Below, one piece after another: positions 22,969-31,900 of a DNA stretch of 64,000 bases. The stretch's first letter is position 1; every line of letters begins with the position of its first letter. Both the position numbers and the translations under genes were made by a program. Source of the DNA: Phallusia mammillata (taxonomy: Eukaryota); assembly GCA_965637545.1 (NCBI GenBank), contig OZ281495.1:20770001-20834000 (forward strand). Reading direction: 5' to 3'. Below the pieces are notes generated by a model. That model was given only the letters and a program-made list of their open reading frames with translations. It was not told the DNA's origin and did no database searches.

Positions 22969-25900
22969 TTAATTCCAATCAAAATTTTCTCCGATATCGG
23001 TAAAAAATTGCTGGTTAAAAGGGCGATAAAATGCTCGCAATTTTTGTAAAGTTTCCACGTTGGCTTTCTGCTTTCCAGTGCGAGTACGGCCTTTTCCACC
23101 TCCTAAACAATTTAACATTTTTACACTTTCACTGCTGCTTTCGTTTACATGATTTTGTAGATGCTGAATGGTAAATTTTCGATAGCAAAAAAGTCCGGTG
23201 TCTGGATGTCGAACAAAATCTTCTCGCAACAAAACTTTTGGGATTCCAATGAAATCCTGCAGTTCCTCGATTATTGGTCCTGGATCTTTAATAAACCGGT
23301 TACCATCAACAACTTTTAAACTCGAGCTGTTGAAGAAACTTTGCCATTGTTTGATATGAGCTGAGTAAATTCCATTGGAGAGTAGAGTTGATGCATGGTT
23401 TGTGTGAACTAAGTTGACAAATTTTTCTCGTAAGTCCGAATGTAAAAGGGATACTTTTTGCCACTCAGTAATGCTGTGTTGTAGTTTTGGAAGATACTCA
23501 TCAACATACTGTTCGAATGTTTCGTATTTGCTGATCATTCGATCATTGTAGAGCTCGTACCTGATCCGCTGTAAAAAAATGGTTTAACTATTGGTTAATT
23601 TATTAATAAGCTACCGGAAATGCACACTGTTTCGAACTAAAAGGTATGTAACGGACATTAACACTTCTCAAGGACAAAAAACTTTCCCCGCCGTTGCAAC
23701 CATTGCGCCAAAAGTCCATTGTTACGACACAACTGCCAACTTTGGTGTCCTACTTTCACGGTTTCCACACGGTTAGTCTTTTCAGCAGTAGGTGGATAAT
23801 TTTACGTTATATAAGAGGGGTGGCCAGACCTGCTTTACGCTCGAGCCGCATATTACATAACTTAGTTTTAAAAGAGCCGCAACACAAAAAAATCAAAAAA
23901 CGAATTTATTCACTCACAACGAAGTGTATGCTATCAAATAATGATTATTGTTGCATAGTGATACTGTGTCTCCACCTGGGATGCAAGGTGTTTAAAATTA
24001 GGCTGCGTAATGACCTTTCAAGTTACTAGTTTTGTAATGATTGAGGAAAGCTTGACAGATAAAACACACAGGTTTAAACTTTGCAGTTTAGTAGCAGAAG
24101 CTGCAATACACATGTAAAATGCTTTCAATGTCAGCCCTGATTTACAGCCTAAATCCAAAAACATATTTGACTACAATGCACAATCTAGCACGCTTCCGTA
24201 CAATAATGTACTTTTCGGTTAGTTTTCGGAATGTACATTGGTTATGACAAATGACACTTTGCCATCTGGTCAAACAACTGCAAGATGGGGAATGCATGTG
24301 CAGCATCAAGGAGCCGCATTCATACCCAGCTAACACAAAACGTTATGACAACTTTCACAACGTTGTTTAAAGGTTGTAAAATGGTTTGAGGTCTTTTTAT
24401 TTTCAAAGTAAATGTTACATTATGGTTGCATGGTTTAACGTTATCCTTGAACGTTTTGAAAACGTTTCAGAAATGTTTTTTTGAAACGTTATTGAAAAAC
24501 ATTTTTAAACGGTGCTAATAGAACGTGTTTATAACGTCATCAAACCAACGTTACCGCATGAACGTTTCTGCAATGTCTATTTACGACATAAATAAAACGT
24601 TATAAATGGACGTTTTTATGTGGTTAAATATAATGTTTTTGAAACGTTATTAAAGTAACGTTTGAATGAGGACGTTTCTGCAACCTTACTAATTAACGTA
24701 ATAAAAATGTTTAAAGTAAACGTTTTTATGTGGTTAAATATAATGTTTTTGAAACGTTATTAAAGTAACGTATGCATTAGAACGTTTCTGCAACCTTACT
24801 AACTAACGTAATAAAAATGTTTAAAGTAAACGTTTTTATGTGGTTAAATATAATGTTTTTGAAACGTTATTAAAGTAACGTATGCATTAGAACGTTTCTG
24901 CAACCTTACTAATTAACGTAATAAAAATGTTTAAAGTAAACGTTTTTATGTGGTTAAATATAATGTTTTTGAAACGTTTTTAAAGTAGCGTATGCATTAG
25001 AACGTTTTTGCAACCTTACTAATTAACGTAATAAAACTGTTTAAAGTAAACGTTTTTATGTGGTTAAATATAATGTTTTTGAAACGTTATTAAAGTAGCG
25101 TATGCATTAGAACGTTTTTGCAACCTTACTAATTAACGTAATAAAAATGTTTAAAGTAAACGTTTTTATGTGGTTAAATATAATGTTCTTAAAGCGTTAT
25201 TAAAGAAGCGTATGCATTAGAATGTTTTTGCAACCTTACTAATTAACGTAATAAACACGTATAAAATAAATGCTTATTTGTGGTTACAATAAACTGTGAA
25301 AAAAACGTTGACAAAAATACGTTTCAAATTTAACGTTGTTTTATTCTTACCAGGGAAGGAAGTAAAACGTTTAATTCAAACGTCATAGTACGCCAGGCCT
25401 GTTCAAGGCGTTATACCGAATCAGCTGGTCTCCCAAGCATTCCCATATGGCAAGGCATAGACTAGAAAAATCTAGCCTGCGGTGGGATTCGAACCCACGA
25501 CCGGAGTCTTTCCGGGACTCGCGCTCTACCAACTGAGCTACACAGGCTCAGTGGAGAATCTAGTCTATGCCTTGCCATATGGGAATGCTTGGGAGACCAG
25601 CTGATTCGGTATAACGCCTTGAACAGGCCTGGCGTACTATGATTTATCGATATGTATGCCGTGATCGCTGGTCTGCATCGACGCTTCAGGGCTGATCCCA
25701 GTATGAATATGTTTCATCTTAGTTAATTCAAACGTGTTTGTGTTTTTACATTAAAGCGTTTTACAACGTTATTAGGTTACGGTACGCTGTTGTAACGAAC
25801 GTTTAAAATTAACGTTTTTTTTTTCATTGCAGTAAAACTTATGCAAAACGTCGTTGTTAAGGCAACGTAACCTACTTAGCCGGCGGTTTTTAAACTTTTT

Positions 25901-28900
25901 TCGTAAGAACACGGTATTTCAGTTGCGTTAACAAAGTTATGACCCAAACTCCACGATGCAACCTTAAGGTCAGGGTGGATTTTTGTTCGGGATCACCAGG
26001 CTAAAATCAGGGGCGCGAGCGCGTGTGTGTCGCATGTCTAGATGCAGATAGAATTTACCTTTTTGTGCCTAGTTTTGTTTTGTACAATTGTATAATAAAT
26101 TTGTGTGTAAAAATGAACGAGCAACGCAAAGAGTACAAAAGGCTGTGGATGAAAAAATATAGAGCCAGGAAATGTCGGAAGGTTACAATTTTGGAAAGTT
26201 CGGAATCCGATGGGGACACGCCCACAACCTCTCAAACACTGAAAAAAAACGTAATATCTGAAAAGGTAAACTGTGCTAAAACAAATACAGGTTATTTGTC
26301 TGATCATAGTTTTGCTGAGGAATCTGTAATGGGACCAAATTATTCCTCAGACGAGGGTGCTGTGTTAAGCTCTAAGTTTAAAAAATATCAGCACTGTCAT
26401 GACAGTGACAGTTCTTCATCAGATTGTGATGCTGAGAACTGTCTTAAGTCTGATGTGAATAAATGGGTAAATCAATTTCAGATCAAGCACAATGCAGTTG
26501 ACTCATTGCTTCATATTTTACGCAACCATGGGCATTCTAATCTTCCGAAAACTTGCCGTGCTCTTGTAAGTACATCTCGACTGGTCAAAACTGTAAAAGT
26601 GTCTGGAATGGACTATTACTATTTTGGAATACAATCACAGATAGCTTTACTATTTGACAGTGTACACCCAATTAATTATCCAAATGTTTTGGAACTCTCA
26701 TTTAACATTGATGGCCTTCCAGTTTTTAAAAGCAGAAACTCTTGTTTTTGGCCTATACTGTGCTCTGTTTGGTTCAATGAATTCCGTCAGTGTGTTTTTC
26801 CAGTTTCACTTTCATATGGAGAATCCAAACCATCATCTTTACAATTTTTACAAGACATGGTTCATGAACTAAAAGACCTCATTAAAAATGGATTGTCAGT
26901 TAACGGATATTTTATGGAAGTTAAATTACATTCAGTTATATGTGATGCCCCTGCACGTGCAATGGTCAAGTCAACAAAACTCTGTTCAGGTTACTTTGGT
27001 TGTGACAAATGTACCCAAAAAGGTTATTGGTGTGGACGTGTTACTTATCCACTTGTTTCACAACTTGTAGAAAGAACAGATATGTCTTTTCGACAACAAA
27101 CAAATCAGGAACATCACCATGCAGTGTCCCCTTTTTGTGATTTAGAGATAGACATGGTAAAACACTTTCCGATTGATTATATGCACCAGGTATGCTTGGG
27201 AGTAATGAAAAAGCTGTTATTAACATGGATACGTGGAAAAAGAAATGTTAAACTAAGCGCAAGTCAAATTTCTGAAATAAGCAACAGGCTGTTGGCACTT
27301 AAAAGTTATGTTCCAAAGTGCTTTGCACGAAAACCAAGAACTTTGCTTGAAATTGACAGATGGAAAGCAACTGAATTCCGGCAGTTTTTAATATATACCG
27401 GTAAAATTGTTTTAAAAAAGGTTTTGAGCAATGAGCTGTATGAACATTTTATGCTTTTAAGTGCAGCTATATCAATTTTTATTTCTCCATCTCTTTGCAA
27501 AACAAATGCCTGTTTGGCTCATTCCCTTCTTTGTACATTTGTCACACAGAGTACAACACTGTATGGTGAAGAATTTTTGGTTTATAATGTACATTCATTA
27601 TTGCATTTGATCTCAGATGTAAAAGAGTATGGGCCACTTGACAATTTTGGTGCATTTGCATTTGAAAATTATATGCACAAAATTAAACGCTTTGTTAGAT
27701 GTGGCAAAAATCCACTTGTTCAAGTAATAAAGCGAGTGCAAGAGATTGGTTTTTCTGAGCTCAACTATCAATCAGTCCCACAAGTTACTTTCTCCAAACC
27801 ACCAAATAATGCATATGTTGTATGTAAAAGTGAAACTGTGAAATGTGTCGAGATGGTGGAAAGCAATGATAAATCATGCCTGTGTAGAGTGTATAGTAAT
27901 GTACAACCTTTGTTCATGGAACCATTTAATTCATCTTTAATTCATGCATACAATATAAATATAAACAAAAGTTGTATGGAAACTCTTGACATTACAAGTG
28001 TCACCTTTAAGAGAGCTGTTTGCATTAAACAAGGCAACTTTGTCAGGTTGATGTGTATACTGCACCACTTATAACTATTTTTTTGCTCAGGTTAATATTT
28101 TATTGCTAATTGTTTGGAAGCATGTCATTTGCTATTGTTGAATTTGCTGAAGATAGCAGTGTGGAAGTTATACCTTCCACATGGATTTTTTCAAAACATG
28201 GGTCATCAGAGAAGTTCAGCTATTGGCCAAGACAGTCACAACGCCAAAAGGTAAAAAGAGGTGAAACACCAGATGAGGAGAAGTGGTTTGTTTACAAAAT
28301 AAAACGTGTGTTTGGATATGAAGGTAAGTTTTATTACAAGGTTTGTGTTGAGAAGTTATTAATTGGATTTTCTTGCAGATGAATATGAGATAGCACACAA
28401 AAAAGCAGGTCTTGCTGTCGACACATCAAACATTGACAGTTCTGATACTGAAACTACTATCACTAGGCCTCATAAAAGACCTGCCAGATATTTGTCGGAC
28501 GAAGGTCAGATATTAACATTGCTTGACTTTGATGATGCTTCATGTTCATCACAATCCTATAAACTAAATATTATATATATATACTATGAAAATTTAAAGT
28601 ATTGTCCTGTTTACAAACTTAAGTCTAAACTTGTCAGCAGACTTTAACTGTTAAAAATTAAATATTGTCAGAAATATAATTGTATGTAGGCTCTACACAC
28701 ACTGTTCAAATTGAAAGTTATAATGTTTTCATTACAGGAGAGTCACCAAGCAAATGTACCAACACAGGTTTGTAGTGTGACAGTTATTATCTACTTGGAT
28801 AAAAATCGTTTGTTCTACTTTTTTACTAGAAGTGGGGGATGAGACAGCTGCTGTGGCAGGTAGGTCTTCAAGATTATGCATATTCATTTGGTACTAAAAA

Positions 28901-31900
28901 TACACTCAAATATGATCTAAATATTTTACGATTTCATTATTGTTTAGTAAGCAGCAGGGTTACTCAAAAACTTTGAGTTTGTTTTCTTTCATTCCTAGTT
29001 TAGAGCTCTGTTTTTTAGGTGTTAATGCACAACAACAGGATGGGGATAGGCAGGATTTAAATGGTAGGTGTTGAAATATTTAAAATGCAAAGCAGGTCTG
29101 TATTTTGTTTGATTTTTTGCAGTAAAAATGGACATGCCTATTAAAGGGCAGCATGAACTGATGAGCATTTTGAAAGAAGCAATAACGAAAGGTGAAGCAG
29201 AAAAACTTTCTCAGTTTGATTTGGATTTGTTCAGCCAAAAGCTGTTGACTATAACAGATTTTCAGGCTTTTGAAAAAAAACTGGAGGAAAAACAGTTTCG
29301 CAGAACAACAGTAAGTAATGTTGTTTTAATTAATGCTGAAAATATTGCTGTCACAACAGATTCTGTTATTGTTTAGCGGCAGTTTTTGACAAGCCTTGGT
29401 GGAGATAATGTTGTGTAAGAAAAATGATGACTACAATTGGTTCCCATGGACTTTGGGAGAAATACAGTTATAAAGGAAGAAAAGGCAAAAGAGCCTTTTC
29501 ACAAACAAACTTTAATAAAGTACTGATGTGTAAGTACATTATTAGTTTTTCCTTTTTGTTTTATTCTTTTTTTAAACAATTGTTTTTCAACTTCCCTACC
29601 TTTTTTATTCCAGAAAGTATACTTCACACTAGGACTGACACTACTGTTCGAGCAGTTGAAAAAGAGCTACAAGACTTTTTAAAGCAGTGTCCTTTCAAAC
29701 CAGGTGGCACAAAGTATAAGGTGGGAAATCTATTGGTCAAGCATTTTTTATTGTTGTCATTAAATACATTTCTAAAAGAGTTTTGTCATCTTTAAAGTTA
29801 AATAAAGAAGTTAAAACATCGTTTGATACTGTTTCCAAGTTATCAAATTAACTTGCTGCTTTAGTAATGTGTTTGGTAAAACATCTTATTGCTCTAATAT
29901 TTAAAAAATAAATAAATATTTACTTTTCCCATTACATGGTTTAAGTTGGTTGTAAATCATACGAATTGAGTTTTGTAGCTGTACAATATTGTAGTAAACG
30001 TCATGTGTTTTTCAGAAATGTTTATCTCCCAACAATTCGTTTGACAGCAGCATCGACTCCTCTAACGGCACTGAACTACTGCTTTCATCGACAGATTCTG
30101 AATAAATCTTTTAAATTTTCTTCAAAACACATGGTCCGGTGATATTTCGTAATAAAAGACAACAAAACGTTTCTGCAGACGTTTAAAAACGACTTGTGAA
30201 AACGTTGACTTTGAGGTTTGAAAGACGTTACTGAGAGTCCACGAAAAGCCGTAGAATTAACGTTATTTTTGAACGTTAAAATACGTTCATAATTCCCTGT
30301 TTTGAACGTTTGTCTGTCGCCTAAAAGAAACGTTACATAAATCGAAATGAAGGACGTTTAGGCAATGTTAATAGTTGTCGTATGCAAAACGTTGAAAACT
30401 ACGTTTTATTGACGTTATGTCAAACGTTTACAGAACGACTATTTAAGCGTTGGTTTTAACGTTTAGGCAACGATTGATTAAACGTAAATCCTAATGTTTT
30501 AAAAACGTTACTGAGAGTCCACGAAAAGTCGTAGAATAAACGTTATTTGAAACGTTAAAATACGTTCAAATTTCCCTTTTTAAAACGTTTTATTAACGTT
30601 TTTGTGTTAGCTGGGTAGGCTCAAGGAGCCGCATTCATAGGCTTAATGAGCCGCATGCGGCTCGGGAGCCGCAGTTTGGCCACCTCTGTTATATAAGTTG
30701 GATTGTTCGGGCTGTTTTGTCATTGTGACGTTCTTGGTTCTTTTTGGGTCAAATAATAAAGTGCATCTGAGACCGACTATCTTACTCTGTCAAGAAACTG
30801 TAAGGTAGAATTAGCAAGGAGGTTTGTATTCTACAAGGTATCATCAGTATAGCTGACTACAAGGTATCATCAGTATAGCCAGACATTGGCAGTATATAGC
30901 AATTTTACGGCAATCGTATTTGCTCTGTGTGTTACATCGCAAGTTACTGTTTTTGTCTACCGTCTCCCCATATTGTAAGTTTCAGTGTAAATAGCGCAAC
31001 CATGTGGAGTTTCGCGCCTCGTATTTGACCATAGTATACTCACAGTCAAAGTCTACATAAAAACAACCAATACAATAGTAGTATCTACTTTCTGACTAGA
31101 CATTAGAAAATAAGATGGGAATCCGAATGTTTGTGTCAGGAGTGACATACAGCAAGTGCACCATTGAAGTTAAATAGTTTTAAATGTTTAATATTGTTAT
31201 TTAAAAAGTGGAAACCAGCTTACGACAGTAAGGGAAAGTGCATGAAAGTGGAAAAAACACTTGCTATTCTAAGCTGTTGTAAGAATCCAAGTCAAACTAA
31301 TGCTGTCTGGTAAATTGCATCGCCAATAATGTTGAAGGACTTTACTTTTAACTAGTTGTATTTCGCTTAATATGGTAGTAATAATCCTGATCTTGAAACC
31401 CTAATGACTACGTTATGAAAAATCAGGACTATGTCCAATTCTGTTAGTTTGTGGCAAAACAGGCCCTGTTCAGTAAAAAAGTTTTTTTTTATTTCGCTAA
31501 GTAAATGTTCGAGTGAAAACAGAAAACCCTGAACAGGCAATAGGTGCTGTTTACGGCAAACATCACAATCGCCAGTAGTTTGTTATGATTTCATGGGGCA
31601 CCATATAAAACTTTGGTAAATATTGGTTAATAAAATTAAACAACACATCATTTTACAGCCAGGTAATGTTGTTTTTGGAACTTACTTCTTTTCGAGTACT
31701 GGACGGGAAATGAAGTTTCCAGTTATTTCTTACGGTATACAAACAAACGGTCCCGCACAGCCATTCAAATATTTTATTACCAAATTAATACAGTTCGGCT
31801 AATAAAGTGACTTTTACAGCTGTATAATATACGTTCTCCTGCTAGTTTTGTAAAAAAATGTTTGGCGGGATTTTTGGCGTTAAACAATTTTTGTTTGGCG

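What the first reader, a model, noticed from the sequence alone, without database searches (positions are those of the whole stretch)
25371..25734. Mobile cassette: a tRNA-like Pol III unit capping a perfect 84-bp hairpin
Seen directly: zero-mismatch 84-bp arms; a 73-nt four-stem cloverleaf with consensus A and B boxes in the loop; TTTTT four bases after the cloverleaf; an 80-bp unpaired tail; and a 12-13-bp TSD typical of target-primed reverse transcription. A normal SINE has its tRNA part at the 5' end and no terminator before its body. Here the tRNA part is central, Pol III would release only an ~80-nt tRNA-like RNA, and a read-through transcript from either strand would form long dsRNA. 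Inference: this is a non-standard retroposed unit, possibly mobilised by Penelope-type RT (known to create inverted terminal duplications), which could yield a small RNA and/or siRNA and silence its CACTA host. It lies ~400 bp upstream of the transposase ATG.
Basis: partly seen in the sequence, partly recalled or inferred. Interest (0 to 1): 0.8.

Follow-up and report, generated by a model that had tools for sequence, protein, structure and literature searches.

The report
Penelope-style insertion scar of tRNA-bearing retroposon
The perfect hairpin with a tRNA-like gene in its loop is real. It is the insertion scar of one young copy of a very abundant sea-squirt retroposon that inserts the way Penelope-like elements do, not a special small-RNA cassette.

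Summary
The arms are 84 bp and 100% complementary. A tRNA-like gene (Rfam tRNA, 56.6 bits) sits in the loop on the minus strand and is followed by TTTTT. There is an 80-bp unpaired tail and a 13-bp target-site duplication, and two empty sites confirm the duplication.

The hairpin is not the architecture of a mobile unit. The family unit is about 348 nt: tRNA-like head H, body B, tail T and spacer X. It occurs as tandem, 5'-truncated and part-inverted copies. In 22 sampled loci, copies end at only two positions, about 175 or about 256. This copy is two antiparallel partial copies, unit 1-175 and unit 92-255, made in one event. Their 84-nt overlap forms the arms, and T is the one-sided tail.

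Resident autonomous Penelope-like elements (reverse transcriptase plus GIY-YIG) show the same shapes and the same 12-14-bp duplications. Published biochemistry fits this: two internal reverse-transcription start sites, and both target strands primed.

No partner element sharing sequence with the unit was found, no hammerhead ribozyme was found, and there is no usable RNA evidence. Silencing of the host is unsupported, and the host transposon moved or was duplicated after the insertion. The host has no CACTA termini and is only weakly EnSpm-like.

This scan has already found the same family on other DNA of this genome. It is a new variant of a known kind.

The parts
25371..25383 (.). Left copy of the 13-bp target-site duplication TTAATTCAAACGT (its last T is also the first base of the left arm).
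   Evidence: D6. The 13-mer occurs once in the C3 sibling and in the X4 contig.
25384..25466 (-). Left arm: family unit positions 92-175 (body B) read on the minus strand. Its outer end is the family's main terminus at about 175.
   Evidence: The B-end 17-mer has 364 exact genome hits, and only about 45 of them continue into T.
25467..25558 (-). Loop: head H (unit 1-92). It holds the tRNA-like gene 25548..25473, A-box and B-box motifs, and a T5 run (25470..25466, whose last base 25466 is the innermost base of the left arm).
   Evidence: ARAGORN. Rfam tRNA 56.6 bits. H is 96-99% conserved across copies, against 80-97% for the rest of the unit.
25559..25642 (+). Right arm: unit positions 92-175 (body B) read on the plus strand, 100% complementary to the left arm.
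25643..25722 (+). One-sided 80-nt tail: unit 176-255 (T). It ends at the family's second terminus at about 255.
   Evidence: This corresponds to the 'tail' of Penelope-like insertions (PMC8557442, PMC11167929).
25723..25735 (.). Right copy of the 13-bp target-site duplication.
24325..30615 (+). Host DNA transposon of 6,291 bp. It has a 16-bp perfect terminal inverted repeat CCCAGCTAACACAAAA, 110-bp subterminal repeats at 24610-25291 and a 653-aa ORF at 26113-28071. A twin copy on C4 carries the same insertion.

Best explanation
The region 25384-25722 is one young insertion of an abundant non-coding retroposon family of this sea-squirt genome. The family unit is about 348 nt: a tRNA-like head H (1-91), a body B (92-175), a tail T (176-255) and a spacer X (256-348). 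In the sense of the unit, which is the window's minus strand, this copy reads [reverse complement of 92-255] followed by [1-175].

Shown: copies of the family end at only two unit positions, about 175 and about 256. Inverted copies almost always carry one end of each kind. The two arms of a copy are nearly identical to each other even in diverged subfamilies. Duplications of the target are 12-14 bp. This copy's 13-bp duplication is confirmed by empty sites.

Inferred: a Penelope-like reverse transcriptase/GIY-YIG enzyme nicked both strands of an AT-rich target 13 bp apart. Each 3'-OH then primed cDNA synthesis on family RNA at one of two internal start sites. The top-strand cDNA ran from 175 down to 1, and the bottom-strand cDNA ran from 255 down to 92. 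A template switch or repair joined the two. The 84 nt copied twice (92-175) became the perfect arms. The head, copied once, became the loop. The 80 nt between the two start sites became the unpaired tail.

The hairpin is thus an insertion scar. The tRNA-like gene keeps A and B boxes and a T5 run and may still give an RNA of about 85 nt, but that was not tested. The host transposon was copied to a second locus after the insertion.
For: Family and unit: 4,413 first-look candidates, 503 exact hits of a 26-mer of H and 364 of a 17-mer of the B end, with control counts of 0. Tandem periods are 342-355.

Two termini: in 22 independent loci every end lies at 171-185 or 244-262. Only about 12% of B ends continue into T. 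Nine of 11 inverted copies have one end of each kind. Among the first 100 listed places of each of two pattern lists, all 8 closely spaced inverted pairs are arranged 5'-to-5' and none the other way.

Single event: arms are 96-100% alike within a copy, while the same copies are 88-93% identical to the young unit.

Duplications: 12-14 bp in most copies.

Resident autonomous Penelope-like elements carry RVT_1 plus GIY-YIG with ORFs up to 845 aa. They show 100% identical inverted 5' arms, one-sided tails of 27-42 bp and duplications of 12-14 bp.

Literature: tandem and inverted insertions with a one-sided tail are described in PMC8557442. Reverse transcription from two internal sites whose spacing equals the tail, with both strands cleaved and extended and AT-rich targets, is described in PMC11167929.
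Against: No sequence similarity was found between the unit and 30 sampled Penelope-like loci of at least two clades, so no partner is identified. The tail is 80 nt, against 27-42 nt for the resident elements and 30-40 nt in the literature. No hammerhead ribozyme is present, although none was detected in the sampled resident elements either. The locus sample is small and was picked with this copy as the query, so it is biased. No read spans the whole hairpin, because only short-read contigs were available. The joining step is inferred, not observed.
Confidence: 0.72

Rival explanations
1. A conventional tRNA-derived SINE mobilised by a LINE, with this copy rearranged by LINE-type twin priming. 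In twin priming the second nick primes internally on the same RNA and gives a 5' inversion.
For: The unit has a tRNA-like head with A and B boxes followed by a body, and most copies end at about 175, so many look like a 175-nt tRNA SINE. A target-site duplication is present. Twin priming does give an inverted 5' segment (my own knowledge of L1 biology, not tested here).
Against: There is no A-rich or simple-repeat tail. There are two discrete outer ends 80 nt apart, not a variable internal priming point. Several tandem units lie inside one duplication pair, as in L021 and L025. An 84-nt duplication at the inversion recurs in a similar form in other copies. The same shapes and duplication lengths are seen in the resident Penelope-like elements. 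No LINE sharing the 3' end was looked for.
Confidence: 0.1
2. One reading: the hairpin with a Pol III gene in its loop is itself a functional, mobile cassette that yields a tRNA-like RNA and/or siRNAs and silences its host transposon.
For: The A and B boxes and the T5 run are intact. A read-through RNA would fold into an 84-bp perfect duplex, with predicted energy -222 kcal/mol and z -21. The tRNA-like part is the best-conserved part of the family.
Against: Canonical copies have no hairpin, and hairpin copies differ in their inner junctions, so the hairpin form is not what is copied. The only exact duplicate of this form is carried inside a second copy of the host transposon. The host was moved or duplicated after the insertion. 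There is no RNA evidence.
Confidence: 0.05
3. A DNA-level origin: an assembly fold-back artefact, a replication fold-back, or two independent head-to-head insertions.
For: Perfect palindromes are a known assembly hazard, and no read spanning the whole structure could be examined.
Against: The same structure is assembled at two loci, C2 and C4, with 0.4% divergent surroundings. One 13-bp duplication flanks the whole structure, and two empty sites lack exactly 352 bp. A 377-nt contig of an independent run (X2) covers 25694-25950 without a difference, although only 29 nt of it lie inside the element. Architecture and end positions are family-wide. Two independent insertions would give two duplications.
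Confidence: 0.04

Closest known systems
Non-autonomous Penelope-like elements and animal (non-LTR) retrozymes
   Same: Short and non-coding. They occur as tandem or partial-tandem units, 5'-truncated copies, an adjacent inverted 5'-truncated arm and a tail on one side only. The duplications match those of the resident Penelope-like elements (PMC8557442; bioRxiv 10.64898/2026.07.22.740005, abstract).
   Different: It carries a conserved tRNA-like gene with Pol III boxes and a T5 run. No hammerhead ribozyme was detected. No sequence similarity to a resident element's repeat or 3' end was found. The tail is 80 nt rather than 30-40 nt.
tRNA-derived SINEs mobilised by LINEs
   Same: A tRNA-like head with A and B boxes followed by an unrelated body, high copy number, target-site duplications, and most copies ending at one main 3' position of about 175.
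   Different: A second terminus lies 80 nt downstream. There are tandem multimers and inverted arms inside single insertions. There is no A-rich or repeat tail. A T5 run lies directly after the tRNA part, upstream of both termini, so a simple Pol III transcript would not contain the start sites.
L1-type 5' inversions (twin priming)
   Same: An inverted 5' segment joined to a direct 3' segment inside one duplication.
   Different: Here the outer end of the inverted segment is a fixed second start site rather than a variable internal site, and 84 nt are duplicated. This comparison rests on my own knowledge of L1 and was not tested here.

Membership tests
Non-autonomous Penelope-like retroposon | Insertions occur as partial tandems and 5'-truncated copies. 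| tested here: met
   Tandem neighbours lie at 342-355 bp. 5' ends are variable, and coverage rises towards position 175.
Non-autonomous Penelope-like retroposon | An adjacent inverted 5'-truncated copy, with an extension (tail) at one end only. | tested here: met
   Nine of 11 inverted copies have one end at about 175 and the other at about 256. This copy has an 80-nt tail on the right side only. All 8 inverted pairs seen in the first 100 listed places of two pattern lists are arranged 5'-to-5'.
Non-autonomous Penelope-like retroposon | The same insertion footprint as autonomous elements of the same genome. | tested here: met
   Resident RT plus GIY-YIG elements have 100% identical inverted arms, tails of 27-42 bp and duplications of 12-14 bp. 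The family's duplications are 12-14 bp, and this copy's is 13 bp.
Non-autonomous Penelope-like retroposon | Sequence similarity to an autonomous partner (repeat region or 3' end). | tested here: not met
   blastn of the unit against 30 Penelope-like loci gave only an unrelated nested fragment and tRNA-arm matches. The sample is limited.
Non-autonomous Penelope-like retroposon | A hammerhead ribozyme in the repeat (typical of canonical clades and retrozymes, absent in Naiad and Chlamys). | tested here: not met
   Rfam scans at E up to 1 find only tRNA. None was found in 5 resident autonomous loci either, at E up to 0.1.
Non-autonomous Penelope-like retroposon | Mobilisation by a Penelope-like reverse transcriptase/endonuclease. 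| not testable with these tools
   This needs a retrotransposition or in vitro priming assay.
LINE-dependent tRNA SINE | A tRNA-related Pol III head with A and B boxes at the 5' end of the transcript. | tested here: inconclusive
   The head and boxes are present. However, copies commonly continue upstream into X, no recurrent 5' end at the head was seen, and a T5 run follows the head.
LINE-dependent tRNA SINE | A single 3' end with an A-rich, simple-repeat or LINE-derived tail. | tested here: not met
   There are two termini 80 nt apart and no A-rich or repeat tail. A LINE match was not searched for.
MITE or foldback DNA transposon | Terminal inverted repeats reach both ends of every copy. | tested here: not met
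   Canonical copies have no inverted repeat. In this copy the right 80 nt are unpaired.
CACTA/EnSpm (CMC) transposon, as the host | CACTA-type termini and a Transposase_21-type transposase. | tested here: inconclusive
   The terminal repeat starts CCCAGCTAACAC. No Pfam family passes its threshold, and only DUF4218 appears at E 0.03. Atlas features lie near Transposase_21 clusters with scores 0.93-0.97. The flanks fit 2-bp duplications, TA and AG.

The most novel reading that the evidence does not exclude
The family would be a new kind of SINE: a retroposon dependent on Penelope-like elements whose strongly conserved tRNA-like module is functionally required. The module could serve as a Pol III promoter with a leaky T5 terminator, or as a tRNA-like handle cut by RNase P/Z or recognised by the reverse transcriptase. 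In either case it would take the place that the hammerhead ribozyme holds in retrozymes. Hairpin copies such as this one would then be live Pol III genes sitting on an 84-bp duplex and possible sources of small RNA.
Probability: 0.3. Interest if true: 0.65.

Novelty: new variant of a known kind. Interest (0 to 1): 0.4.

Why it matters
How Penelope-like elements insert is the least understood part of eukaryotic retrotransposition. The two-start-site, both-strand priming model rests on one in vitro study of a lizard element.

A short, very abundant, recently active element offers thousands of natural insertion products against which that model can be tested. Here the two termini lie 80 nt apart, and whole insertions fit in a few hundred bases.

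The family also joins a Pol III-type tRNA module to a Penelope-style footprint. I found no description of that combination in the searchable literature.

For genome annotation, such copies are easily mistaken for MITEs, foldback elements or assembly artefacts.

Tried and rejected
1. blastn of the unit against 7 GIY-YIG loci and 30 Penelope-like RT loci found no shared sequence, so no partner is named.
2. Rfam scans at a permissive E-value, over this copy, a full tandem unit and five autonomous loci, found no ribozyme, only tRNA.
3. RNA evidence gives no verdict. All runs are short-read contigs. The one run guessed to be RNA (X15) has depth on the element in the same proportions as the DNA runs and none on the flanks, so DNA carry-over and real transcription cannot be told apart.
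4. Reads spanning the hairpin could not be obtained, because contigs break at the repeat.
5. Pfam on the host ORF at E 0.01 gave nothing. At E 10 it gave only DUF4218.
6. Structure around the two start sites: both lie in apical parts of predicted hairpins. Only 7 similar sequences were available, so covariation could not be judged and I make no claim.
7. Literature searches for a described ascidian SINE of this kind, or for tRNA-bearing Penelope-dependent elements, found nothing relevant.
I used the listed coordinates instead.
9. A self-BLAST of palindromic copies returned nothing for several loci, and a local self-alignment ran through the loops. I replaced both with arm-by-arm alignment.
10. 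The zero differences between the C2 and C4 copies of the insertion are not unusual. About 1.5 differences are expected at 0.4% divergence, so I make no claim of conversion or selection.

Full report
OBSERVATION.
- The repeat finder gives arms 25383-25466 and 25559-25642: 84 nt, 100% complementary, 92 nt apart. It also gives the direct repeat TTAATTCAAACGT at 25371-25383 and 25723-25735.
- ARAGORN calls a tRNA-like gene at 25548..25473 on the minus strand.
- Rfam's tRNA model scores 56.6 bits, E 2.6e-11, against a gathering score of 29.
- TAGCTCAGTTGG and GGTTCGAATCC occupy the A-box and B-box positions. On the minus strand TTTTT follows 3-4 nt after the cloverleaf.
- The 80 nt at 25643-25722 are unpaired.
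- The first in-frame ATG of the downstream ORF is at 26113, 391 bp away.

WHAT FAMILY IT BELONGS TO. The genome is a 240-Mb sea-squirt assembly, and the window is C2:20,770,001-20,834,000. A search of the genome with the element gave 4,413 first-look candidates.

I cut the element into three parts: head H (the loop, in tRNA sense), body B (the arm) and tail T. I then laid these on 30 fetched loci. Canonical copies read H-B-T in one orientation, and in arrays H-B-T-X-H-B-T with a 93-nt spacer X. The period is 342-355 bp.

I took a 348-nt unit from a young tandem copy: H 1-91, B 92-175, T 176-255, X 256-348. Exact-pattern counts give 503 hits for a 26-mer of the tRNA 3' end plus the T run, and 364 hits for a 17-mer at the B end. 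The reversed-pattern controls gave zero hits.

Across the sampled copies H is 96-99% conserved, while the rest varies between 80 and 97% in 10-nt blocks. The k-mer depth profile of three DNA runs shows the same pattern.

TWO TERMINI. In 22 independent loci every insertion end lies at unit position 171-185 or 244-262.
- Genome-wide, only about 45 of the 364 exact B-end sites continue into T. About 175 is therefore the main terminus and about 256 the minor one.
- 5' ends are variable, and coverage rises steadily towards position 175.
- Some insertions hold more than two tandem units (L021, L025), and flanking duplications mark L021 as a single insertion.
- Eleven loci hold inverted arrangements. 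In nine of them one outer end is of the 175 type and the other of the 256 type.
- Among the first 100 listed places of the H pattern there are 14 tandem neighbours and 6 closely spaced inverted pairs.
- The B-end list adds two more inverted pairs, one of them this copy.
- All 8 pairs are arranged 5'-to-5' and none 3'-to-3'.
- Target-site duplications could be read in most copies and are 12-14 bp, with a few longer imperfect ones.

THIS COPY. In unit sense (the window's minus strand) it reads [reverse complement of 92-255] followed by [1-175].
- The 84-bp arms are the overlap 92-175.
- The loop is the head, which is present once.
- The unpaired tail is T, the stretch between the two termini.
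- B and T are 100% identical to other young copies, so perfect arms simply mean a young insertion.

The answer is yes. In L004, L005, L006 and L018 the arms are 96-100% alike, although these copies are only 88-93% identical to the young unit. Both arms being copied from one RNA species in one event explains this, and no concerted evolution is needed. The inner junctions differ from copy to copy, so the hairpin form is made anew at each insertion and is not itself propagated.

THE INSERTION IS PRECISE AND RECENT.
- A diverged sibling of the host transposon on C3 has the 13-mer once, and its flanks run on collinearly.
- In run X4, from another study and year, a 1,147-nt contig joins 25370 directly to 25723. 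It therefore lacks exactly 352 bp, which is the element plus one copy of the duplication (table 8, record 25).
- That contig differs from the window at several flank positions. It may be an empty allele or another copy of the host transposon.

LINK TO PENELOPE-LIKE ELEMENTS. The literature describes their insertions as 5'-truncated partial tandems, often with an adjacent inverted 5'-truncated copy and a 30-40-bp tail at one end only (PMC8557442). A purified lizard element cleaves and extends both target strands, prefers AT-rich sites, and starts reverse transcription at two internal RNA sites. The tail is the stretch between those sites (PMC11167929).

I tested whether this genome's own elements behave in the same way.
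- GIY-YIG and RVT_1 searches found many copies with open frames up to 845 aa, in at least two clades, some in tandem arrays.
- Self-comparison and cross-comparison of 30 loci show 100% identical inverted 5' arms and one-sided tails of 27-42 bp.
- Seven insertions with clear boundaries have duplications of 12-14 bp.

The tRNA-bearing family therefore shares its footprint with the resident autonomous elements, including the length of the duplication. It does not share sequence with any of the 30 sampled loci. It has no hammerhead ribozyme, and none was detected in five autonomous loci either. Its tail is about twice as long as theirs.

MECHANISM (INFERRED).
1. The two strands of an AT-rich target are nicked 13 bp apart.
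2. The top-strand 3'-OH primes cDNA from unit position about 175 down to 1. The bottom-strand 3'-OH primes cDNA from about 255 down to 92.
3. A template switch or repair joins the two cDNAs.

This accounts for the arms, the loop, the tail and the duplication without giving the hairpin any function.

The T5 run directly after the tRNA part lies upstream of both start sites. A plain Pol III transcript of the head could therefore not be the template. Read-through or another promoter is needed, and this question stays open.

THE HOST. The element lies in a 6,291-bp DNA transposon at 24325-30615.
- It has a 16-bp perfect terminal inverted repeat beginning CCCAGCTAACAC and 6.2 subterminal repeats of 110 bp.
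- It has a 653-aa ORF with no Pfam family above threshold. DUF4218 appears at E 0.03, and the language-model neighbours include Transposase_21 clusters.
- It is best called possibly EnSpm/CMC-like, not shown to be CACTA.
- A twin on C4 has different flanks and differs by about 0.4% outside the tandem repeats. It carries the identical insertion. The host was therefore moved or duplicated after the insertion.
- Zero differences in the 352 bp are within expectation.

READS. Only contigs were available.
- Three DNA runs from three studies hold the flanks. Run X2 covers 25694-25950 without a difference, which includes the right junction, but only 29 nt lie inside the element.
- No record spans the hairpin.
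- The run guessed to be RNA shows depth on the element in the same proportions as the DNA runs and none on the flanks.
- Nothing can therefore be said about transcription.

RIVALS.
- LINE-type twin priming of an ordinary tRNA SINE would not give two fixed termini, tandem multimers, or the match to the resident Penelope-like footprint.
- A functional hairpin cassette is contradicted by the variable junctions and by the linear canonical form.
- An assembly or DNA-level artefact is contradicted by the two loci, the single duplication, the exact 352-bp empty sites and the family-wide pattern.

EARLIER NOTES OF THIS SCAN. Five earlier findings on other DNA of this genome describe the same family as a Penelope-style retroposon with a tRNA-like gene. 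I treated them as leads. They turned my first reading (LINE-type twin priming) towards the Penelope test, and I then ran that test independently.

LIMITS. The locus sample was drawn with this copy as the query and is small. The partner element, transcription of the tRNA-like gene and the joining step are all untested.

Noticed in passing
window 24325-30615; twin at G000:C4:28618137-28624525 (approximate): A 6.3-kb DNA transposon with a 16-bp terminal inverted repeat CCCAGCTAACACAAAA, 6.2 subterminal 110-bp repeats rich in AACGTT (24610-25291), apparent 2-bp duplications (TA, AG) and a 653-aa ORF without any Pfam family above threshold. Only three copies are in the assembly: two about 0.4% apart and one 81-86% identical on C3.
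   Followed up: partly
C4 twin, opposite window 28026 (L033, roughly 2655-2948): The C4 copy of the host transposon has about 294 bp that the window copy lacks. The segment is unrelated to the retroposon unit and to anything else in the window. Its longest open frame there is 600 aa, against 689 in the window.
   Followed up: partly
window 24300-24324 and 30616-30660: Both flanks of the host transposon contain nearly the same 20-mer (CAAGGAGCCGCATTCATA and neighbours). The right flank holds further GAGCCGCA motifs and a GAGCCGCATGCGGCTC palindrome. The transposon appears to sit inside another repeat.
   Followed up: no
L041-L070 (e.g. G000:C1:1489196, C2:24754366-24760738): There are many Penelope-like elements with long open frames (up to 845 aa). 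Some are identical copies or tandem arrays of period 2,600 bp, with 100% identical inverted arms. No hammerhead was detected in five of them at E up to 0.1. They look recently active.
   Followed up: partly
family copies in L002-L030 (unit coordinates): In hairpin copies the arm primed at about 255 often stops at unit 68-123, with three of ten at 85-95. This is just 3' of the tRNA-like structure and the T5 run, which may act as a block to the reverse transcriptase. The sample is small.
   Followed up: no
unit positions 127-206 and 226-280 (window 25594-25673 covers the first and 25693-25722 covers positions 226-255 of the second; this copy lacks 256-280): Both termini (about 175 and about 256) fall in the apical parts of two predicted hairpins, reminiscent of the stem-loop start site of the lizard element. 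There are too few diverse sequences to test covariation.
   Followed up: partly
L051/L052 657-750: A fragment of the tRNA-bearing unit (positions 54-146, 84% identity) lies next to a Penelope-like copy. This is probably a nested insertion rather than shared ancestry.
   Followed up: no
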